A stretch of DNA of 64,000 nucleotides. It comes from Ramazzottius varieornatus. Lineage: Eukaryota; Animalia; Tardigrada. Both the position numbers and the translations under genes were made by a program. This document shows positions 2,306 through 53,107 of the stretch, piece after piece; the first letter of the stretch is position 1, and each line of letters starts with the position of its first letter. The stretch is from NCBI GenBank assembly GCA_001949185.1, contig BDGG01000004.1, forward strand, positions 1,699,620-1,763,619. Reading direction: 5' to 3'. The notes under the pieces are model-generated. The model was not told where the DNA came from, ran no database searches, and was given only the letters and a program-made list of their open reading frames with translations.

Positions 2306-4548
2306 TTCTTGCCAATTACGTATACATTCCAGTTTTGAACTCAGATACGTGCCACTACTTGAGCCAGCCCGGTGCAGCTGTATTAGTCGATGACAAGATT
2401 GCATTTGAGAAATTCCAAAGTTTTTTTCCTAGAGCGAAACTGTATACTCTTTCAGGCGGTTTACCTGAGTGAGCTTTAGTTTCATACAAGGAAGTTCATT
2501 TTATCTTGTTGCTTTTATCGTCCCTTTTTTTGAAGTCCGATCCTGAATAACTTCGGTCATAAAGTCTATTCGGAATCCAAGCACATGGGACTGCTCAGGC
2601 CCGGAGCGCCCTCTTGTGGCAAGCTGTAGCCGGTTTTCTTCGTAGCGAAGGTTCCTCCTGGGCATGGACCTGTTACGGAGCTTCCTTGGATCAAAGAGAG
2701 GTGTTTTGGAGAGTCGACGTCTATGATTATTCGGTGCAGCGATCCATTTTGGAGGACCTGGGACAGGATGTGAACTACGTAGGAGGAAGTACTTGGACTT
2801 TAACTACAGACAACGAGCCTTCTTGTATTAATATCACCAAGGAGTACCGCGGCGACCCCCAGTGAAAAGTCCAGTACTCTATACGACGTCTCGGGCGAAA
2901 CTTAATTCGCTTAATATACCATATCAGAATCAAGTTATTTCTTGAAATTGTCTAGCGAATATCGGTTTCCAGAATACTTCCAAGAGTTATCCATGATGTT
3001 TGTTTTTAAATTCCGATAAGGACCCAGATGGGCGAGCCGAGTACAACAGCGTGTATTGAACACGCGATCTCCATGAAGCAGCTGATACAGAAACATCAAA
3101 GACTCAAAGATATACTGTGACAGCGTGACAAGAGATGTCGCACTACCAAACGAGAAAGCCTGTCTACTACGGCAGTGACATGTCGATAACAAACTGACTG
3201 CTGTGTACGGCGGAGATGTACACTTCAGAGAGCCACGCACTATTTCGGTAGCGACGAGCTCCAGACTTCACCCTCGTGGAACGCCAAGCACAAGTACTTC
3301 CACATTCTGTGCAAGTGCTACAAATGTATCCAAAAGTTGTGCACTATGCAGTACATCAGATAGATGTGATAGAGTAAGCTTGCTCCATGATGTACTGCCA
3401 GAAGCTGTAGTCGATTTGGCTGGCTGAACAGTCGCAGGCTTTCAGGCAATTAATTCATCCTGTTTTCACTTATCTCGATATTCTCTTGTGCCATGGTTTG
3501 AAACAGTTGACCCACACCCTCGGGAACCGGCGAAAATATTAAGCCCGCAGTGACGTGATGGTCTGATATTTTCCATAACTAAGCGAGCTTGGACCATCGG
3601 CGAATCTTATCCGTCGAAAACTGATACCGCGTGAATCGCGACAGCCGGCGACTTTCAAGAACTGAGACAGATACTTTCCGAGAAACGTTGTAGGAATACC
3701 AAGTGCATGGAATATTTTGTCGGGTGCGCTATCGATCTATACTTACCGAATCTTCCGAGATCACATGTCGACAGTTTCTACAAACCATAAATGATTACCG
3801 ACGCCGGATTGCAGAGTCAGGTACGCTGTAATTAAGAATCTATAATGTATTAGTTCAGCGAAATTAGTTTATAATTTACGCATCCCCGCGGAGTGGAAAC
3901 TGGAAAGTTAAAACAATACCCTCACGTACCACGCACCACGTATACCAGACAGCTTTCACTTACACAGTAAGTTAGCAGACCAGCACACTGCCTGCTGATA
4001 AGATGTCACGGGACCAGCAATAAAAAAATGATGAACCGGAAACGAGTCGCTGCATTGGGCGATAAGGGTTGCTCCTGTAGTAAATTGATCCATTACGCGT
4101 TGTCCGCATTGGAGCCCATCCTGTAAATATAGACGCTTTCAAGAGCACAATATTCCGACGAAATATCGATTGAAATCTTAGTGTTTTGCGCGGAGACCCG
4201 TATACAATCAGTATTGCTAAATCTCATCCGACGGGAGCTTATTCTTTGTTTGTTGTATCTCGTTAGAAAACAATTACAAACCCTCCATTGTGGTTCATCT
4301 AGAAACGCTTAACCAGGCCGTTGTGCTGGTTGTATTCGAATTCGACATCTTTGGGGTTGTCGGTCAGAAATGGATGATATGTTTGAAGTAAATGATGGTA
4401 CTTAAGCATAATGGCCTTCCCTCTATTTTGGTAGCCGGAACTTGTTAACGAACTGCTGGTGTCGTCAATGCCGGCCTTGGCGTGCCGCAAAAACCCATCT
4501 GTCACATTGAAGGAATTTAGAGCCAACACATGACGATCATCATTCATA

Positions 4549-19235
<14,687 letters not shown>

Positions 19236-38887: not shown

Positions 38888-39563
38888 ATGCTGGTCTGCA
38901 CTCGCGACCGCCTGTTTTCAGTTCTTTTTCTCTTCTTTGCGCTCCTGACCGCTCCCTGCTTGGGAGCTCCTGCCAAGCAGTTCTGTGGCCAAGGCTTGGC
39001 TAACATACTAAAGATGTTATGTAATGGGGCATACAACGACAAATCCGGTACGTCCTTCTGAATCCTGGTACTCAAATCTGCCAGAGCCCTTCGTTCACTG
39101 TCGTTCTCCTTCAACAGGTCTAGCGGATAAAGGGGTATCAGATCAAGACGACTATGTTGGAGTTTCCCAAGAGTGTTGTAAATCCGCTTGCACTATAACA
39201 CAGCTCGCTAGCTATTGCGCCACAAAACCGGCGATGGATCTTGTATTCAGGGCCATATCCACGATGAACAGCGATGATGTAAGTGGCTTATTCCTCCTTC
39301 AGAAACTTGGGTTCAACTTAACTTGTTCCCTCCGTTTTGATTTTGATGACCTCTTTAAGTCTGTTTCATTATGTGTATTTTGTAAATTGTAGTCGGCAAA
39401 GGGATCAAAACTGAGCTCGTCAGGTGGCGCTGCAAAGCCGGCGGGACCTTCGAAAACGGGAGGTCGATTCCAAGAAATTGGAAGAGATGGTTTTGACTTA
39501 TCTTCTCTACTGGACCGAAGTTTAGCGGAGTATGAATCCTTCCCTACTCGTCAAAAGAGGTGA
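38888..39563 (+). CDS. Insulin-like peptide precursor, IGF-type architecture
   Basis: Exons 38888-39047, 39118-39278 and 39393-39563. Signal peptide (LFSVLFLFFALLTAPCLG), B chain QFCGQGLANILKMLC, short C segment, A chain GVSQECCKSACTITQLASYC (CCx3Cx8C) and a long C-terminal extension. The exact 3' end is less certain. Confidence 0.9.
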
Positions 39564-41014: not shown

Positions 41015-44000
41015 ATGATCGCTCACCCGAGCGCAGTAATGCAGCAAGCTCGACCAGAGCTCAAGCCAAACATCAACATGCCTCATCCGAAAAGCGAGAT
41101 GAAGCCTTTCATTCAACGCTTCGTTCCTCCTAATCTGCAACAGATCCAGAAGCTACACGGGCTCACTGCGAGCGGAGGAGTCGACGTTTTCAACAGTTAT
41201 AAGAAACCACCTGCGGTTCTGTGAGTAGCTCGCGTCGATTATTCCATCCGTAACTAGCTAATCCTATTACTCGCTCTCCTTATCATTTCAGCACTGCAAT
41301 AACTTTCGGCCCACAAAGCGAAGCTGAAATTCGATCGCAGAGCTGCGTTCAAGTTTGTGCTAACAAGCTATTCACTCCCACATTTCCGTTCGATCCTGTC
41401 CCGAATGGCTTGATGGACACCAAAATGGTATGGCTCGACACTTCCGGTTCGTAGTATTCGTTAGTGATCATCTGTATAGATTGTGCCTTCTGATTCTTAT
41501 AGGGTGTCAACTTGCGCAACAAGAAGTGCTCGTCATGCAACAAGCTGAACAGCGACTGTCCCGGCCACTTCGGCCATCTGCAGCTCTTCTTTCCAGTCTT
41601 CCATATGGGCTACATGAAGAACGTCTTCCAGATTATGCAGTGTGTCTGCCAAGTATGTATGACGATTGTATAATTATATTGTTATGCGAATCAGACTCGT
41701 ACCCCTGACATGATGCTTTTTGTTCACAGAACTGTTGCAGAGTTGTCCTTGCTGGTCCGCAAAGGTCCTCAATGCTGAACAAGGTGTCAAGACCAATGAC
41801 GATGACATTGAAGAAGGACCTGAAGAAGAAGATCGTCGAGCTTTGCAAAAAACAGAAGACCTGTCCTCATTGTGGCACTGTCCAGCCTACAGTGAAAAGA
41901 ATCGGGTACTATCGCATAGTCATGGAGATTCTTCGGCCTCCGTCCACCCAAAGAAAACTTTTGCCATATCTTACCCATATGGCGGAAGTAACCGCCACGG
42001 ACTCTTCCGGCGGGGACTTTCTACGCATCGACTTGGGAACCGCAAAAGTAAGATTAATTGATATCTTGTATGGGACCTAGGCAAACTGTGCCGCAAACAA
42101 ACTCGGCAAGATCGTTTTCCTAAGTGGCGCATAGTTTCGGTTACGAGGAGAGCATAGCGNNNNNNNNNNNNNNNNNNNNNNNNNNNNNNNNNNNNNNNNN
42201 NNNNNNNNNCGGAAGGCAAAAAGTTCGACCTGACAAGTCCACCATGCCTGACAACTCCGCTATGCACTCCTTATAGTGACACCGAAAAGGTGGACCACTT
42301 TGCAAAACAGTATTGTCGAGTTTGTTTATCGCACTCTATATTTATTATACAATTATATCTCGTAATTTATCATTTCTTTTTACTTATTTATTTTTATTCC
42401 AAAGGTTGGTTTTATAGATTCTGCTGAATCCCGTGTACTGCTCAAAGATACTCGACAACATTCCCATCCAAGACTTCCCCCTCCTTTTCTGCACAGTCGG
42501 CTCGCCAGGTGACTTAGTCATGAGATGCGTGCAAGTTCCACCCGTACCTATCCGACCCACCGTCATGCAAGAAGCGGAAGGCAGCGCCAATCAAGACGAC
42601 ATCACCGTCGCCATTTCCGGTGTTTTAGCTTTCGATCAGATCCTCCGTGAAAGAATGGATAAGGACCCCACTCGTCAGCTGCTAGAGAATTGGGAGAACA
42701 TGCAGTGGAAGTACAATCAGATCCTCAATGGTACAGCGAAAGACCCGAGTTCCAGCACAGCAGCTGTCGCGTTCAGCAAACCCCACAAGGGCTTCGAGCA
42801 ACGACTCAAAGGAAAACATGGGCGGTTTAGGGGTAACTTGAATGGCAAGCGAGTGAACTTTAGTGGTCGTACTGTCATTAGTCCCGATCCCAACTTGAGG
42901 TTGGACGAGGTGGGTGTGCCGGTGTACATGGCCAGGATTCTGACGTTTCCGCAGTATGTGAACTCGAGGAATATTCAAGAGTTGAAGAGGCTGGTGGCGA
43001 ATGGGTCGACATATCCTGGTGCTTCGAAAGTGACGAAGCATCAACCGGATGGGAATTCGTACGCAATCAGTTTGAATAACCCGAAGGTTGCAAAGGACCA
43101 GGAACATAAACTGGAGATTGGGGATATCGTTGATCGACACTTGAAGGCAAGCTTTTTTTTTCTTTCGATAATAGCACATACGACTTTGAAAATCTCTGTA
43201 GACAATTATTCTATATAACTTTGTCGAAGATTTTACAAATGGGAACTCGACGCACAAATTCTGGCCAGAGGTTTTCCCAAGTGGCGCACGTTTCTATTGT
43301 CGTTGGCTAACAGCGTGCGCTACTTGAAAGGATCGTCGTGCGGAGCTCGTTTGCTGAGCTCCCATTTGTGAAATAAGGACGAAGTCCAGTGCTTCTTCTT
43401 GTAGTTTCAAGAATATACTTTTGTAGGACGGTGATCCAGTGTTGTTCAACCGCCAACCGTCTCTCCACAAAATGAGCATCATGTCGCACAAAGCCCGAAT
43501 ACTTCCATCAAGAACTCTTCGCTTTAACGAGTGCGTGTGTACGCCGTACAACGCTGACTTCGACGGCGATGAGATGAACATCCATGTCCCTCAAACATAC
43601 ACCGCGCGTGCCGAAGCTGAACACCTCATGTTATCCACGCGTAATATTCTGACACCGAAGAACGGGGAAGTCATCATCGGTGCTCATCAGGACTTCATCA
43701 CCGGGTCGTACTTGCTGTCCAATAAGGATAACTTTTTCACAAGATCCGAGTTCGATCAGCTTGTGACGCAGATGCTGGTGGGAAAGGACAGAGCGCTACA
43801 GCTGACCTGGCCGAAACCGGCGGTGTGGAAACCTCAGAAATTGTGGACGGGAAAACAGGTAAGCCAAGTAACAAAATCTGATAACAATTTGAAATTGGCT
43901 ATCCTGGCGTTATCCACCTCTATACACCTTTGTTCGGTGGTGAACATGGTACGGGGTATGCAGGAGCGGGATGGTTAAGTGTGTTTGACGGGAAATGAGC

Positions 44001-47498: not shown

Positions 47499-48288
47499 TA
47501 CAGGTTAGAGGAAGCCCCTTCATGTTTCTGTGATGATAGAGCGTTTGGACCGCTCATCACGGTACTTTCTTTTTTATCTCGTTCTGTGCATTCACACGTA
47601 TCTGAACAGGAATCCTTCCCGCTGCTAGAGGTCGTCCGATTAATTTCTTTGAATATCATCGAAATATTTGACAAGAGCACGGCTGGTAGTTTTGGCGTTC
47701 CATACATACATTAGAGTCTGCTGTTTCTCCCAACCGCCTCAAGGTCAGCCAAAATGCAAAGTAATCACCTGTGCCAATAATTTTTCTCCTGTATGCCGTG
47801 CTTAGAGTACAGACCCGAGTATCCAAGGTGTCTTCTGGTGCTGGAAGTAAGTGGAGGTTCCTCAGCGTACACCAAAATATTGAAGAGGTTGGAATGTGGT
47901 GTGGTGTCAAAAACACGTCTCCTGCGTGCAGATGAGGAAGTACTGGCATGTCATGCAGAATCGGACACGCGCTCATACAGAAAGTCTTTTGTCCAATAAT
48001 GGAGTCAGAAAAATGCCGAGAAGGTTCCAGGCCAAGCATGTCCAGACATTTTTCGAAAAGTTGTTGACGATGTATATAATAAGCGCATTGCACAACAGGA
48101 ACGATCGTACGAGAAAGTATCAGTTTACTAGTTCGTCTTCTGGTCCTGGTAGCAAAGTTGCTCCTGAACTCCAAGTTCCAACACGACTGAAGTCAGTTCC
48201 CCGTTCTAGCGAAGCCGCTTCGTTACAGTAGTTCGGCATCCTAGCTGGTTAGTGTGGATTCTGTGAGAGCGCGACCTTATTGTGAAGA

Positions 48289-48996
48289 ATGGATCGTCGA
48301 CACCGTGAGAACGTCCTGATCGTGTGCATTGTTTTGATGATGGCCAGTTTCTGCAGTGGCGCTCGGGTTTGCGACCGCGATACCGTGCGTGGTGAGTTTT
48401 CGATTTGTGGTCTCTATCCTCCATTGTATCAATAGAATTACTTTATTTGATTTACTCAACAAATAATACGGATGAATATCTGAGCAATGCAAGTTTTATG
48501 ACAGATGTGTGGCAAAAGTGCGGACATTACTTGAGCAAGCGGAGCATTCAGGACCCGGCAAGCTCCTTCGTGGGGAGATGGAATGGGCTACGGGCCATCC
48601 AGCGCCCCATGATGCCGTCTGTGGCACCTCAGCTGGAACAGGCGGACGTCATTGAATACGGTAAACTTAAGTGAATCAAATTTTCCCAAAACTTTGATGC
48701 GGAACCCATCAAAAACTGCCTCCTTTTTGTGATCGGTCAGCTGAACTTCGAGTGCTGTTGTTTTTCCAGATTATGAGGAGCTGGAACGAGAAGAGGTCCC
48801 CATATCCAAGCCGGAAAGACTTACCGTGGAACGGAAGAAGCAAGACCAGCAAGAGTCCGAAGCCCAAGCCGAACAAGGAAGTCGATCTCGACGACCCCGC
48901 AATCTTCGCATGCGACTTCGAGGATCCACCAGCGCTGTCGCACGCAACTGCGAAGCGGTTCTTCAGCAGATGCATCAACTATGCGCTAAGAAATGA
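48289..48996 (+). CDS. 161-aa secreted relaxin/gonadulin-like (insulin superfamily) precursor with only four core cysteines
   Basis: Exons 48289-48391, 48505-48660 and 48770-48996 with two phase-1 GT-AG introns give 486 nt in frame. Signal peptide MDRRHRENVLIVCIVLMMASFCSG, B-like ARVCDRDTVRDVWQKCGHYLS-KR, acidic connecting peptide, multibasic RSRRPRNLRMRLR, A-like GSTSAVARNCEAVLQQMHQLCAKK*. TATA-like TATATAA near 48073. Confidence 0.7.
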
Positions 48997-49455
48997 TATC
49001 TCTTTGTGGATTTTGCTGGTCTATGTATTGTACAGATCTGCATTGTGGAATCTGCTGTATCGAAATTCCACTTTATTTACTGGAATCCATGATTTATCGG
49101 AAGCCCCTTTTATATGTTATCGTAATTTAATTTAAGTACCAAAGTATTTCGTTGTTTCACTCTACATGGAAGAACGTGTTCATTGTGATACGATTATCGC
49201 GTCCGAACCTTGACGTCGCATCATAAACCATTTCTTTTTATTGTTCAAAAAATGCTCGGCGCTCACCGAAGCATAATAAACTCACAAGCAACAGCATGAA
49301 GTCTAAAAATTTTAACAGACGCTGCTAAAAAGGTGGGAAGCATAGAAATGTGTCGACAAAGGCTGTGGTCCTTAGATGGGCCATAAAAATAGAGGCTATA
49401 CGCTAAAACATCTAGCCGAATCAGCGAATAAAGCGATACATCAGAACTCAGGACG

Positions 49456-52397
49456 TCAAGAGCTTTCGAAGACGTGGTCCTCAAACGCGCCAGGAGAACC
49501 TGCAGTCTTGTTTAGCCGCTGGCTTTCGGTAGCCTTAGATGGCTCGCGACTGGATCTGGATGGTGAATTCTCCGAAGATGATTCTTGTCGTATGGGGAGA
49601 CCTATGATTTTACGGATGGACGAAGGCAGTTCCTCAGCCCCGATCAGTTGCAGGTAGATGCTTTCAGCCAGCTCCAACGTCTTTTCCAAGTTGATCGTCA
49701 TCGCCAGGTCGTTGATGTGCTGAAAGGAAACACATTACCGAATAAGAACGAAGAAACTTCATAAAAACCCACCGGTGGCCTGGTACTTACTCTAAGGATC
49801 TCAGTGGAACTAAACTTGTTTTCCACTAAGGTATTCTTCTCCGTGTCCAGTATGGCATAAGCGACCAGAAGGTGAAAGTTCTTACAGGGCCTGCCCGTCC
49901 ACAATACCTGTAACGGAGGCCATGACACCGAACTGGACATACTAGTTTTATAGAAACTGCCAAACCTACCTCCCACAGACGCATTACATCCTCAAAGCTG
50001 AACTCCCGCTTGAAGTGTACAAGCAGCCATCGGAAACAGAAGTACAGCTTGGGATCATTGGCGTCTGAAAGAAGAGCTCAAGTAGTTACTTCCACAGGAA
50101 GGAGTTCAAACAGTGCTTCCGAAGTGAGAGATTACCAATGTAGCGTTTGAGAGAAGGGTCGAGGTACTTCATAAGGGTACTCAAATGATCGAGCTCCTAA
50201 AATAGCAAAGCACAGTCACACTGTATGCCGTATGTACGAGAGACCCAGACTACTGCTCTTCCATATTGCTTCCTTTTTACCTTCATCAGTTTCTCCATAT
50301 CGAAATTGTGGGTCTACGGTAGTGCATCAAATAAATTCTCAAGATCCAATTAAAATACACCTAATCAATCGCGGAAGTGCCTTACAATGGAATCCATAAG
50401 GCCGCAAAATGTCCAAAATGTGTCCACTTCATCGCCTTCCATTATGACCATAACGGGCGTCAGTAGATCACTCATTCCCTGAACGTAACCTAAAAAGAAG
50501 ATAAACAGAACTCAAGCTAGGTTGACCCCAGTCAACCCTCTAGTTTGACCTCAGACCAAAAGATAGTTCGGTCATACCTAGGTCAAAATTCAGCATGCAG
50601 TACGTCATCAACAGCTCGTTCATCACTTTCAGGGCCGCGCTCTTTCCCTCGAAAAACGGGTGATTGCGATCCGTGCGATGAACGTCCTTCTCTACGGAAA
50701 CAGGAAGCTGTAACAGTATATTCAAACGAGGTTATTAGAGTGTCTCACCAATCAGGTCCTTGCGCTCCCTCCAGATGGAGAATCGCTTTTCCTGCTCCGG
50801 GCTGATTGTCGACCATTGACTTTTCATGCGGTAGTAATCAGCGCTGGAACGAGCATTCGCTTTACAAGAAATCGTACAAAATGCGCAAACGGAAATGCTT
50901 ACGCTAAAAGCTCACGCTTTCCTCTTCGTTCTTCCATCGTGGCGTTCCAGTCGTAGTAACCTAGGAGGTACTTCCACACCTCTTTTCGTAAACTGACATC
51001 GACACCCTAATAACGAGAATAATGCTTGATTTTCTACACGTGAGTAGGGCGGTCAGACTTCACTTACGCCTCTGAAAACGATATCCTTGACTTCCGCAGC
51101 ATGCTCGTCCGTTATTCTTCCTTCCGAATCAAAGAAAGACTTCCATTCCGTCGCAGTCAACGGTGCCCGACGGTGTACCGTATGGCGTGGAGGTAGTTCC
51201 AACGGAGGTTTCTGGAAGCTAATGCTGTTGATTTAACGGTGATAGGGAGTAGAGGAGTGACAGCACACCGAGCATTTGAATGTCTTACAATTGAGATGAC
51301 TTCGAAGTCCTGGTCATCGTTTGAGGTGGTCTGCAAGTTGTTCATACTTATCGGTGGTAGCTGAAAGTCGGGGATCCTGTGCGTATCCATAGCGCCGTGT
51401 GGACCGCCATCCTCCATCATCGGCGGAGCAAGAACATCGACCGCCGTCATCAGCATGCTGTGTACTTTCGAGAGACCCAGGAAGGCTGTCGTTACGGGAC
51501 TTTTCGCGAAGCGCTACGACAACAAGCGATAATCGATATTACAGTATGTTCGAAAAAGTCATTAGTTCAATCGATGACAGAGCAAAAAAACGATGAAACC
51601 GTACCTGCAAAAAATGCGCTGACTGATTCGGAATATCATAGAGGTCTTGTCGTCGTTGTCTTCCTCGTCTGTCCCGCACCAGACATAAGTGCGGATCCTT
51701 AACGGACCTGACGAAGAAAATCGAAGTTGATCCAAACATCATACTGAAAACTTTGATTAGCGGGATAAGGCAATACCGTTCGATCATTAGCCGTTCTTGA
51801 AGAAAGGCGATCAGCTCCTGGTAACCCATATCGTCCAGTTCCAGCGTAGAGTGACTAGTGCCGTCGTTGGTGATAAACGTCAAACGAACTGGTGCTCCGT
51901 CCACTTCGTCCCCATGGACTTTAAAGCACTTCACGTCTTCGATGTCGATGCTGACGTGGGGTATTCTGTAGCTACCGGTCTTTGTGGAGAACATTGTGCA
52001 GTTAACTTGCTCGGCATAGGTCCCATCTTCGGATAACAACGCTTCTTTCCAAGGAGACCATTCCAGGCTTGTTCCGAGACGCTCCTGCAATACACGTGGA
52101 TCATTAGCCCATTACGCTTTGAACATTTGCAGAAAGACTTTAGTGTCGACAGGAGCTCACCTTACTGACCACTGACAAAGATCCGATGACTTTTTCCGGA
52201 ACGGCGATGGCAGCACTATGAGCCAGCTTGGGCATCAGTACATTCACTGCATCCCAGCATTTTATCACGGTGACCTGTATATAACAACAACGGGATCACC
52301 AAAGATATTCGCAAACCAAAAGTGCAATGACGATAAGATACGAACATAGACCATTCTGTATAGTCCTTACCTCCGGTTTTTCCAGTTCAGAATTCAT
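49456..52397 (-). CDS. TBC1D15: TBC1 domain family member 15/17 (Rab7 GAP, Gyp7-like)
   Basis: R finger EKDVHRTDR, Q finger GYVQGMSDLL, LYFCFRWLLVHFKREF, LWEVLWTGRPCKNFHLLVA and EILRHINDLA. ATG at 52397, stop at 49458-49456. Confidence 0.92.
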
Positions 52398-53107
52398 CGT
52401 TGCCGTCTGCTGTCGAACTTCAAATGATGACTTCAAGAACGGGATTTCGTAGCGAGAGAGGCAGGTCACTGTCGAGGTGGCACCCCGTTCCTTGCGTCTC
52501 CTCCTGGAACCTACAGCAGCTGCTTCAACGCTTGTCTTTGACGGACTTCACGACGAGTTGATCTCGTTGAAATCTACGATGCTGTCACGGTATGCATTGA
52601 TCCGGTTTTAGGGAGTAGTCCACTCAGAGAAGCGAGAAGTAACAGGACATCCACACCTCTAGAAATCGGAAATTTAGAATCCATATAAACGTAAACAAAG
52701 ATCAGAAATCAATGAGTGATGTCATTCAGTATCCAACCAGTGATTTACAGTAATCTGGGCGTCAGTTCGTTCTGGTGGAATGATTCCAAAAGCTCTTGAT
52801 TAACTCGCAACTGTATCATACTAGGCTCTGATGATTGATTAGTTGATTCGTGAAAATACACCAGTGAACCGCCCCCTGGCTTATGGTCGAACTCTTTGTA
52901 AAACACTGGACGCTCTTCGCCGAGTTCGTTTGCCTCTGATCCTCTGCTATCCAAACTGTACATGTTCTTTTCCTTACAGGTACTGGGTCGTTCGTGTGGA
53001 AGTTTGCATCCTGTTGAGCTTGAAAGGTAGGTGCTTGCCGAGACGTTGGACCACTGCGTCCGCGACGGAGTGGGAGTTTGGAAAGTTCGGACCAAATAAC
53101 GCGCCAA

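What the first reader, a model, noticed from the sequence alone, without database searches (positions are those of the whole stretch)
48289..48996. Hidden relaxin/gonadulin-like hormone with only two disulfides
Seen: a three-exon, 161-aa precursor that the ORF track does not show as a whole, squeezed between the 3' ends of POLR3A and TBC1D15. It has a signal peptide, a B-like chain with exact insulin spacing C-x11-C-G then KR, a phase-1 intron in a long connecting peptide, a multibasic site, and an A-like chain with only two Cys (C-x10-C). Known: relaxin B chains read CGRELVRAQIAICG with the RxxxRxx[I/V] receptor cassette. Here CDRDTVRDVWQKCG has both arginines in the same register, with W at the hydrophobic position. 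Insulin A chains normally have CCx3Cx8C. Inference: a relaxin/gonadulin (dilp8-like) ligand for an LDLa-LGR receptor that has lost the intra-A disulfide, a minimal insulin-fold variant that six-Cys pattern searches would miss.
Basis: partly seen in the sequence, partly recalled or inferred. Interest (0 to 1): 0.85.

Follow-up and report, generated by a model that had tools for sequence, protein, structure and literature searches.

The report
Four-cysteine insulin-like prohormone gene, tardigrade
A real, already annotated three-exon gene of the tardigrade Ramazzottius varieornatus encodes a small secreted prohormone that looks like an insulin/relaxin-family precursor with only two of the usual three disulfide bridges, but its family membership, fold and receptor are not proven.

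Summary
Exons 48289-48391, 48505-48660 and 48770-48996 (+) have GT/AG borders and give a 161-aa protein with the stated motifs.

The gene is not hidden. The same 161 aa are GenBank GAU97655.1 (RvY_08915-1, Ramazzottius varieornatus), and UniRef calls it "Insulin-like domain-containing protein".

A paralogue on contig C18 has the same three exons. Its exons are conserved, its introns are not, and dN/dS is 0.33. It keeps the four Cys, the KR site and the RxRR site.

Insulin-family membership is plausible but unproven.
- For: C-x11-C-G, the prohormone layout, a phase-1 intron in the connecting peptide, and an IGF-like gene 9 kb upstream, one of only two canonical insulin-like genes detected in 55.8 Mb.
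- Against: no Pfam Insulin match, Asp where GlyB8 should be, and A-like spacing C-x10-C instead of CC-x3-C-x8-C.
- Uninformative: AlphaFold models (pLDDT 44-49).

No relatives were found outside this species. The relaxin/gonadulin/LGR reading is a minority possibility. A single-LDLa LGR gene exists. The third cassette position is W in this gene and H in the paralogue. Gonadulins are defined by six Cys.

The scan's own note s1-795373, on this same window, had already recorded the linkage to the IGF-like gene.

The parts
48289..48391 (+). Exon 1: start codon, signal peptide (residues 1-25), first nine residues of the B-like chain including Cys28, and the first base of codon 35
   Evidence: Identical to residues 1-34 of GAU97655.1. 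Paralogue local score 72 against a shuffle mean of 15; dN/dS 0.25.
48392..48504 (+). Intron 1 (GTGAGT...AG, phase 1). It interrupts the B-like helix between R34 and D35.
   Evidence: It is not conserved with the paralogue's intron: score 17 against a shuffle mean of 15.6.
48505..48660 (+). Exon 2: rest of the B-like chain (Cys40-Gly41), K46-R47, and the conserved start of the connecting peptide (SIQDxASSFxxRWN)
   Evidence: Paralogue score 54 against 15.4; dN/dS 0.47. Own-genome match E 8e-8.
48661..48769 (+). Intron 2 (GTAAAC...AG, phase 1), inside the connecting peptide
   Evidence: Not conserved with the paralogue: 16 against 14.1. The neighbouring IGF-like gene also has a phase-1 intron after its B domain.
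48770..48996 (+). Exon 3: acidic/Gln-rich connecting peptide, RKK, RSRR, A-like chain, KK, stop
   Evidence: Paralogue score 85 against 17.4; dN/dS 0.27. Own-genome match E 1e-12.
48289..48363 (+). Predicted signal peptide: basic n-region, hydrophobic core, and an S-G-A|R cleavage context (V-D-A|R in the paralogue)
   Evidence: Kyte-Doolittle 9-residue means reach 3.7. The cleavage site is inferred from the -3/-1 rule. No SignalP was available.
48370..48372 (+). Cys28 (proposed equivalent of insulin B7)
   Evidence: Conserved in the paralogue.
48519..48524 (+). Cys40-Gly41 (proposed equivalents of B19-B20)
   Evidence: CGHYL is identical in the paralogue.
48537..48542 (+). K46-R47 dibasic site after the B-like chain
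   Evidence: KR is conserved in the paralogue. Cleavage itself is inferred.
48883..48894 (+). R125-S-R-R128 furin-type site before the A-like chain
   Evidence: The paralogue has RPRR at the aligned place. Cleavage itself is inferred.
48895..48987 (+). A-like chain (residues 129-159) with Cys147 and Cys158 (C-x10-C). The following KK (48988-48993) is a likely carboxypeptidase-trimmed tail.
   Evidence: NCExxLQQxxQLC is conserved in the paralogue. AlphaFold predicts a helix at 140-160, at low confidence.
38888..39278 (+). Neighbour: first two exons of a canonical six-Cys IGF-like gene (B domain C-x11-C, A domain CC-x3-C-x8-C). Not part of the gene, but the basis of the linkage argument.
   Evidence: Pfam PF00049 scores 26.3 bits against a cut-off of 23. 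It is one of only two canonical A chains found in the genome.

Best explanation
RvY_08915 is a functional gene for a small secreted prohormone. It is most likely a strongly derived member of the insulin/IGF/relaxin superfamily that arose by local duplication from the IGF-like gene 9 kb upstream and lost the intra-A-chain disulfide. Proposed mechanism: the signal peptide is removed after Ala25. In the ER the B-like helix (residues 26-45) and the C-terminal A-like helix pair through Cys28-Cys147 and Cys40-Cys158, which would correspond to B7-A7 and B19-A20. Convertases then cut at K46-R47 and R125-S-R-R128, and the C-terminal KK is trimmed. The result would be a two-chain peptide of about 20 + 31 residues, plus a connecting peptide whose N-terminal part is itself conserved and may be a second product. 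Shown here: the exon structure, purifying selection, conservation of the four Cys and both cleavage motifs, and linkage to a canonical insulin-like gene. Inferred: secretion, disulfide pairing, cleavage, the fold, and common descent with insulin. The receptor is unknown. Both an insulin/EGF-type receptor-L-domain kinase and LDLa-LGR genes exist in the genome.
For: (1) The gene model equals GenBank GAU97655.1, and UniRef names it 'Insulin-like domain-containing protein'. (2) The paralogue at G000:C18 (locus L002) has the same three exons. Exon scores are 54-85 against about 15 for shuffles, intron scores are at shuffle level, dS is 0.94, and dN/dS is 0.25/0.47/0.27 per exon (0.33 overall). The four Cys, CG, KR and RxRR are all kept. 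(3) C-x11-C-G is the insulin B7-B19-B20 spacing, and the two canonical insulin-like genes of this genome have the same C-x11-C. (4) The layout is signal peptide, B, KR, long connecting peptide, RxRR, A, then a Cys one to three residues from the end. (5) Hydrophobic residues sit at -1, -4 and -7 from the last Cys in both paralogues (L/M/L and L/I/L). In insulin these positions are A19, A16 and A13 (sequence; the insulin pattern is from established knowledge and PMC12796670). (6) There is a phase-1 intron in the connecting peptide, as in the neighbouring IGF-like gene. (7) Linkage: only two canonical insulin-like A chains are detectable in 55.8 Mb, and one lies 9.1-9.4 kb upstream on the same strand. 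By my estimate the chance is about 1e-3. (8) By language-model features, every nearest named ESM-Atlas cluster is in the insulin clan, with scores of 0.75-0.79. This counts as a lead only.
Against: Pfam Insulin (PF00049) gives no match at E<=10, and the whole-genome PF00049 scan did not pick up these exons. There is no PDB sequence match. BLASTP against the two canonical insulin-like genes of the same genome gives no chain-to-chain alignment. The A-like chain has C-x10-C, whereas A7-A20 in the family is x12, and A6 and A11 are absent. The residue after the first B Cys is Asp in both copies, where the family has the near-invariant GlyB8. Core positions +8/+9 of the B helix are V/W in this gene but S/H in the paralogue. 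The C-terminal half alone gives no usable ESM-Atlas hit. The AlphaFold models have pLDDT 49 and 44.5, and Foldseek finds nothing. Parts of the 'connecting peptide' are as conserved as the chains, which is unusual for a spacer. I could not reproduce the basis of the UniRef name.
Confidence: 0.5

Rival explanations
1. A lineage-specific secreted prohormone that is not descended from insulin. Its two Cys-bearing helices would form a disulfide-stapled helical hairpin or dimer, or it would be cut into several linear peptides such as the conserved SIQDxASSFxxRWN stretch. The C-x11-C-G spacing would be convergent.
For: No profile or pairwise similarity to any insulin-family protein. No relatives outside this species among 1.84e9 representatives or 5.8e9 proteins. 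Non-canonical A spacing and no GlyB8. A conserved segment inside the 'connecting peptide'. The unspliced read-through of exon 1, and the intron-side extension of the paralogue's exon 2, also give C-x11-CG by chance, so the motif alone is cheap.
Against: Adjacency to one of only two canonical insulin-like genes in 55.8 Mb. The public 'Insulin-like domain' label. The insulin-like hydrophobic pattern before the last Cys, and an end-of-chain Cys in both paralogues. All named ESM-Atlas neighbours are in the insulin clan (weak).
Confidence: 0.28
2. One reading: a relaxin/gonadulin (dilp8-like) ligand that activates an LDLa-containing LGR through the R-x3-R-x2-hydrophobic cassette of its B chain.
For: R30 and R34 are in the relaxin register, and CDRDTVR is identical in both paralogues. 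A gene with one LDLa, LRR exons and a 7tm_1 domain exists at G000:C6:1296354-1300130, and a multi-LDLa GPCR at C7:593964-598523. No canonical relaxin-type gene was detected, so that receptor lacks an obvious ligand. Gonadulin genes lie next to aIGF genes in insects and spiders (PMC7357564), and this gene lies one gene away from an IGF-like gene.
Against: The cassette is RxxxRxxI/L (PMC4561518), but the third position is W here and H in the paralogue, so it is not conserved. The cassette is known from vertebrate relaxin, not from arthropod relaxins or gonadulins (my knowledge). Gonadulins are defined by six Cys at the insulin positions. Whether the C6 receptor is orthologous to LGR3 or LGR4 was not tested. 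There are no expression data and no binding test. The exon-wise searches for canonical insulin-like genes are insensitive.
Confidence: 0.15
3. A secreted but uncleaved small protein with a non-hormonal role, for example extracellular matrix, antimicrobial or stress-related. The basic motifs would not be used as cleavage sites.
For: Nothing shows processing. Large parts are predicted disordered and rich in E/Q/K/R. Tardigrades have many lineage-specific secreted or disordered proteins (general knowledge).
Against: KR and RxRR are conserved at exactly the chain borders while the surrounding residues diverge. Cys residues are present only in the two terminal segments.
Confidence: 0.05
4. Not a functional coding gene: a chance ORF chain or a mis-spliced model.
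Against: Exon-specific conservation with dN/dS 0.33 at dS 0.94, against unconserved introns. Canonical splice sites. The independent GenBank model is identical. The alternative ORF over exon 3 (48752-49135) has no conserved counterpart in the paralogue.
Confidence: 0.02

Closest known systems
Insulin/IGF/relaxin superfamily prohormones (Pfam PF00049; six-Cys scaffold B7-A7, B19-A20, A6-A11)
   Same: Signal peptide, then a B chain with C-x11-C-G, a basic site, a long connecting peptide with a phase-1 intron, a basic site, and an A chain ending one to three residues after its last Cys. Hydrophobic residues at the A13/A16/A19-equivalent positions. Genomic adjacency to a canonical family member.
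   Different: Only four Cys. A6 and A11 are missing, and the remaining A-chain Cys are 10 residues apart, not 12. GlyB8 is Asp. There is no profile match, and an extra intron lies inside the B helix. Part of the connecting peptide is conserved.
Gonadulin / Drosophila Ilp8 (Veenstra 2020, PMC7357564)
   Same: Very divergent insulin-like peptides that ordinary searches miss, located beside aIGF genes, in genomes that also carry an LDLa-LGR.
   Different: Gonadulins keep all six Cys. Expression in gonads and LGR3 orthology could not be tested here. An RNA polymerase gene separates this gene from the IGF-like gene.
Vertebrate relaxin-2 / INSL3 (ligands of RXFP1/2)
   Same: Two Arg four residues apart at +2 and +6 from the first B-chain Cys, as in RxxxRxxI/L (PMC4561518).
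   Different: The third cassette residue is W/H, not I/L/V, and is not conserved between the paralogues. Four Cys rather than six. There is no sequence similarity beyond the motif.
Caenorhabditis elegans alpha-type insulin-like peptides (lacking A6-A11; from my knowledge of Duret 1998 and Pierce 2001, not checked here)
   Same: A natural precedent for losing the intra-A-chain disulfide within Ecdysozoa.
   Different: Those peptides gain a compensating extra B-A disulfide and so still have three. Here only two would remain.

Membership tests
Insulin/IGF/relaxin superfamily | B chain with two Cys separated by 11 residues (B7, B19) | tested here: met
   C28-x11-C40 in P0001, and the same in the paralogue. 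The canonical genes of this genome have the same spacing.
Insulin/IGF/relaxin superfamily | A chain CC-x3(4)-C-x8-C (A6, A7, A11, A20) | tested here: not met
   Only C147-x10-C158. A regex for the canonical A chain hits the neighbour gene and L004 but not this gene.
Insulin/IGF/relaxin superfamily | Match to the family profile (PF00049, cut-off 23 bits) | tested here: not met
   No PF00049 match at E<=10 for P0001 or P0002, while the neighbour scores 26.3 bits. The genome-wide PF00049 scan finds two other loci only. UniRef's 'Insulin-like domain' name must rest on another signature, probably SMART IlGF (my inference). I could not run that.
Insulin/IGF/relaxin superfamily | Gly after the first B-chain Cys (GlyB8) and Gly after the second (GlyB20) | tested here: inconclusive
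   B20-equivalent Gly41 is present in both paralogues. The B8 equivalent is Asp in both. GlyB8 is fully conserved in vertebrate insulins (PMC12796670).
Insulin/IGF/relaxin superfamily | Prohormone layout with basic cleavage sites flanking a connecting peptide | tested here: met
   KR46-47 and RSRR125-128; the paralogue has KR and RPRR. Actual cleavage is not testable here.
Insulin/IGF/relaxin superfamily | Insulin fold (B helix packed on two A helices, with inter-chain disulfides) | tested here: inconclusive
   AlphaFold2 pLDDT 49.3 (single sequence) and 44.5 (with paralogue rows). Helices are predicted at 30-44, 52-66 and 140-160, but the packing is not trustworthy. Foldseek against PDB gives nothing at E<=0.001.
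Gonadulin (Ilp8 orthologues) | Six Cys at the insulin positions | tested here: not met
   Four Cys in the mature part. Definition from PMC7357564.
Gonadulin (Ilp8 orthologues) | Gene next to aIGF (and relaxin) genes | tested here: inconclusive
   The IGF-like gene at 38888-39278+ lies 9.4 kb upstream on the same strand, but an Rpb1-family gene lies between them. Whether the neighbour is an aIGF orthologue was not tested. The paralogue has no canonical insulin-like gene within 20 kb.
Gonadulin (Ilp8 orthologues) | Co-occurrence with an LGR3 orthologue | tested here: inconclusive
   A single-LDLa + LRR + 7tm_1 gene exists at G000:C6:1296354-1300130. Whether it is LGR3 or LGR4 was not resolved.
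Gonadulin (Ilp8 orthologues) | Expression in gonads | not testable with these tools
Relaxin (RXFP1-type ligand) | B-chain cassette RxxxRxxI/L | tested here: not met
   R30 and R34 are present and conserved. The third position is W37 in this gene and H in the paralogue. Cassette definition from PMC4561518.

The most novel reading that the evidence does not exclude
A natural insulin-fold hormone held together by only the two inter-chain disulfides, kept under selection in two copies in a tardigrade. It would be the missing ligand of the animal's single-LDLa LGR and a remnant of the IGF-gonadulin-relaxin gene cluster, which would then predate the split of tardigrades and arthropods.
Probability: 0.12. 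Interest if true: 0.8.

Novelty: new variant of a known kind. Interest (0 to 1): 0.5.

Why it matters
If this is a true insulin-superfamily member, it would be the first natural one I know of with only two disulfides. That would be a minimal version of a fold for which the A6-A11 bridge is usually treated as essential for folding and receptor activation. It would show what six-Cys and Pfam-based surveys overlook, extend the aIGF/gonadulin/relaxin linkage beyond arthropods, and offer a candidate ligand for an orphan tardigrade LDLa-LGR. If it is not insulin-derived, it is still a conserved, species-restricted secreted prohormone pair in a model extremophile animal with a small known peptide repertoire.

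Tried and rejected
- Relatives outside the species: none were found. I ran an exhaustive phmmer with exon 3, a word-indexed search with P0001 and with the two-paralogue profile, and JGI metagenome scans by protein and by a degenerate DNA pattern for L-x-KRSIQD-x-ASSF. That pattern gave 3 hits, all chance matches with stops.
- Control for those blanks: a canonical insulin-like gene of the same genome finds only one relative with the word-indexed tool, so blanks from that tool say little. The genome collections offered are prokaryotic, so no other tardigrade genome could be searched.
- Pfam, PDB sequence and PDB profile searches: nothing relevant. LcrG, Crk-like and Prp19 at E 0.2-0.7 are noise.
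- Complex prediction of residues 26-58 with 128-161: ipSAE 0.03, verdict 'no answer'. This is evidence neither for nor against.
- AlphaFold2, twice, and Foldseek: too low in confidence to use. VIA-align was not run on such models.
- ESM Atlas on residues 88-161 alone: no usable hit.
- Helical amphipathicity: significant only for the A-like helix of P0001 (muH 0.40, 2% of shuffles). It is not significant for the B-like helix or for the paralogue's A-like helix, so I do not use it as an argument.
- Third candidate A chain: C13:1553741 (E about 1) shows no insulin-like ORF.
- Literature: no paper mentions RvY_08915, RvY_18330 or the accessions. Koziol 2018 on tardigrade neuropeptide precursors is not held, so I cannot say whether that survey listed this gene.
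- Joined step left out: I built no hand-joined spliced protein. The window gene was handled exon by exon by reference, and then through the public protein P0001 that a search returned. The paralogue was handled only exon by exon, so its 173-aa joined model was neither searched nor folded.

Full report
**What is in the sequence.** The window is G000:C4:1699620-1763619 of a 55.8-Mb, 200-contig assembly. The protein records identify the organism as the tardigrade Ramazzottius varieornatus.

- Exon 1 is 48289-48391, with donor G|GTGAGT.
- Exon 2 is 48505-48660, with acceptor AG| and donor G|GTAAAC.
- Exon 3 is 48770-48996, with acceptor ttttccAG| and stop TGA.

Both introns are phase 1. The ATG has a good context, and an in-frame TGA lies two codons upstream.

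**The gene is annotated, not hidden.** An exhaustive phmmer search with the exon-3 peptide against 1.84 billion representatives returned two proteins.
It is GenBank GAU97655.1, 'hypothetical protein RvY_08915-1'. UniRef100_A0A1D1VA25 names it 'Insulin-like domain-containing protein'.
- P0002 has 126 aa and is GAV08671.1 (RvY_18330), a paralogue.

From this point I used P0001, a protein returned by a search, for whole-protein analyses. I built no hand-joined sequence. The paralogue's joined model was left out and handled exon by exon.

**The gene is real.** Searching the animal's own genome with each exon peptide finds one other locus, and only one: G000:C18 about 442.5-443.3 kb, minus strand.

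Read by eye, that locus has the same three-exon layout and the same phase-1 splits. The second split codon is again G|AT = Asp. Intron 2 there uses a GC donor (G|GCAAGT).

One search compares the two loci:

| Region | Local alignment score | Shuffle mean | dN/dS |
|---|---|---|---|
| Exon 1 | 72 | about 15-17 | 0.25 |
| Exon 2 | 54 | about 15-17 | 0.47 |
| Exon 3 | 85 | about 15-17 | 0.27 |
| Intron 1 | 17 | shuffle level | - |
| Intron 2 | 16 | shuffle level | - |
| 3' flank | 19 | shuffle level | - |

Synonymous divergence is high (dS 0.94), and overall dN/dS is 0.33.

The public model of the paralogue (P0002) lacks exons 1 and 2 and reads intron 2 through. It is probably mis-annotated.

**Anatomy of the precursor.**
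- Residues 1-25 form a typical signal peptide: a basic start, a hydrophobic core with Kyte-Doolittle means up to 3.7, and A|R as a -1/+1 context shared by both copies. Cys13 and Cys22 lie in this segment.
- The mature part has four Cys: 28, 40, 147 and 158.
- The B-like segment contains R[VI]CDRDTVR, four variable residues, [KR], then CGHYL. Its spacing is C-x11-C-G, and K46-R47 follows.
- The start of the connecting peptide, SIQDxASSFxxRWN, is conserved. The middle is variable. An acidic/Gln-rich part ends in the conserved AQAEQGSR-x-RR (RSRR125-128 here, RPRR in the paralogue).
- The A-like segment ends in NCExxLQQxxQLC, followed by AKK or H.
- Hydrophobic residues sit at -1, -4 and -7 from the last Cys in both copies. 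This is the A19/A16/A13 pattern of insulin's C-terminal A helix.
- Conserved KR and RxRR sit exactly at the borders of the two Cys-bearing segments. This is the strongest argument for a two-chain processed hormone.

**Tests of insulin-family membership.** Met:
- B-chain Cys spacing with Gly after the second Cys.
- Prohormone layout.
- A phase-1 intron in the connecting peptide. The neighbouring canonical gene also has a phase-1 intron after its B domain.

Not met:
- Pfam PF00049 gives no match at E<=10, while the neighbour gene scores 26.3 bits.
- The genome-wide PF00049 scan does not see these exons.
- The A chain lacks the CC-x3-C part, and its two Cys are 10 residues apart rather than 12.
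- The GlyB8 position is Asp in both copies.
- BLASTP against the two canonical insulin-like genes of the same genome gives no chain-to-chain alignment.
- PDB sequence and profile searches give nothing relevant.

Inconclusive:
- AlphaFold2 gives pLDDT 49.3 and 44.5. Helices are predicted at 30-44, 52-66 and 140-160, but the packing is not trustworthy. Foldseek finds nothing.
- The complex test of the two segments returned 'no answer'.

Weak leads:
- The nearest named ESM-Atlas clusters are all in the insulin clan (prorelaxin H1 at 0.78, Ins_beta at 0.75). These scores are below the level the tool treats as meaningful.
- The C-terminal half alone gives no hit.

The UniRef name shows that some curated domain signature accepted the protein. 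Since Pfam does not match, I infer SMART IlGF, but I could not check this.

**Genomic context.** At 38888-39278 (+) lies a canonical six-Cys gene with B domain C-x11-C, a short connecting domain without dibasic sites, A domain CC-x3-C-x8-C and a downstream extension. That makes it IGF-like.

Exon-wise searches with PF00049 and with an A-chain profile find only two canonical insulin-like loci in the whole 55.8 Mb: this one and C4:2592.7-2593.0 kb. A third marginal hit is not insulin-like.

By my estimate the chance that an unrelated gene lies within 10 kb of one of two such loci is about 7e-4. Allowing for either paralogue it is about 1.4e-3. It rises proportionally if more insulin-like genes escaped detection.

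The paralogue has no canonical A chain within 20 kb on either side. An Rpb1-family RNA polymerase gene (41.4-47.5 kb, + strand) separates the IGF-like gene from RvY_08915.

In insects and spiders the gonadulin, aIGF and relaxin genes lie side by side (PMC7357564). The arrangement here fits a local-duplication origin but does not prove it.

**Receptors.** G000:C6:1296354-1300130 (+) has one LDLa exon, LRR_8 exons and a 7tm_1 exon in order. This is the type-C1 LGR architecture (PMC4561518). C7:593964-598523 (+) has at least five LDLa repeats followed by 7tm_1, which is GRL101-like. Two loci carry paired receptor-L domains, the architecture of insulin- or EGF-receptor kinases. Both receptor routes therefore exist. 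Nothing ties the peptide to either.

**The relaxin/gonadulin reading.**
- The two Arg are indeed at +2 and +6 from the first Cys and are conserved.
- The cassette is RxxxRxxI/L, but the third position is W here and H in the paralogue.
- Gonadulins are defined by six Cys at the insulin positions, by LGR3 co-occurrence, by aIGF synteny and by gonadal expression. The first criterion fails, the second and third are inconclusive, and the fourth is untestable here.
- A point in favour by elimination: no canonical relaxin-type gene was detected although an LDLa-LGR is present.

I put this specific reading at about 0.15.

**Relatives elsewhere.** None were found. A canonical insulin-like gene of the same genome also finds only one relative with the word-indexed tool, and no other tardigrade genome could be searched. 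So these blanks do not show that the family is restricted to Ramazzottius.

**Verdict.**
- It is a secreted, probably processed, prohormone (about 0.8).
- It is a derived insulin-superfamily member with two disulfides (about 0.5).
- It is a relaxin/gonadulin-type LGR ligand (about 0.15).

The gene is annotated but, as far as the held literature shows, unstudied. I rate it a possible new variant of a known kind, of moderate interest. The decisive tests are cheap: spliced reads, TBLASTN in other tardigrades, InterProScan and disulfide mapping.

Noticed in passing
window 38888-39278 (+), continuing downstream: A canonical six-Cys IGF-like gene. Its B domain is FCGQGLANILKMLC, a phase-1 intron follows ..NDKS, the connecting domain is short and has no dibasic site, the A domain is ECCKSACTITQLASYC, and a splice donor leads into a C-terminal extension. 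Pfam Insulin scores 26.3 bits.
   Followed up: partly
L002 (G000:C18:441019-444240), minus strand 2293-1495: The paralogue of the finding has exons 2293-2176, 2009-1839 and 1727-1495. Intron 2 uses a GC donor (G|GCAAGT). The public model RvY_18330 (126 aa) omits exons 1-2 and reads intron 2 through, so it looks mis-annotated. The three-exon reading would give 173 aa.
   Followed up: yes
L009 (G000:C6:1293000-1302000), + strand about 3226-7071: One LDLa exon, two LRR_8 exons and a 7tm_1 exon lie in order on one strand. This is a type-C (relaxin-receptor-like) LGR with a single LDLa module. Whether it is orthologous to LGR3 or LGR4 was not resolved.
   Followed up: partly
G000:C7:593964-598523 (+) (L010): At least five LDLa repeats are followed about 1.9 kb downstream by a 7tm_1 match on the same strand. 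This is a GRL101-like multi-LDLa GPCR.
   Followed up: no
L004 (G000:C4:2591184-2594513), + strand 1348-1830: The second canonical insulin-like gene of the genome. Its B chain is VCGKQLTSLLSLVC, the connecting peptide is long with KR/RKRR sites, and the A chain is ECCLKPCAVKDMIGYC. Its only relative in the protein collection is a 93-aa ENA protein, P0003, at 69% identity.
   Followed up: partly
window 48263-48274 and L002 minus strand about 2320: A 12-base motif, GTGAGAGCGCGA, is shared by both paralogues 15-25 bases upstream of the ATG. The 5' flank local score is 30, against a shuffle maximum of 27. It may be a conserved 5'UTR or promoter element. A TATATAA lies at window 48073-48079.
   Followed up: no
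window 48370-48411 and L012 minus strand 1009-1050: Reading exon 1 through into intron 1 also yields C-x11-CG, as does the intron-side extension of the paralogue's exon 2. The bare motif therefore arises easily by chance and is not evidence on its own.
   Followed up: yes
window about 42100-42200: A run of N (seen as X in the ORF 41971-42267 on the minus strand) marks an assembly gap inside the RNA polymerase gene.
   Followed up: no
window 53078-54385 (+) and 55779-56474 (-): A SAS-6 N-terminal domain gene (E 2.6e-26) and an HCNGP-like gene (E 1.8e-26) flank the region downstream. The ORF 51539-52090 (-) gives a weak, below-cut-off Sep15/SelM match.
   Followed up: no
G000:C1:2784806-2786526 (+) and G000:C3:824954-826662 (+): Two loci each carry two receptor-L domains, the architecture of insulin-receptor or EGF-receptor kinases. 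I did not determine which is which.
   Followed up: no
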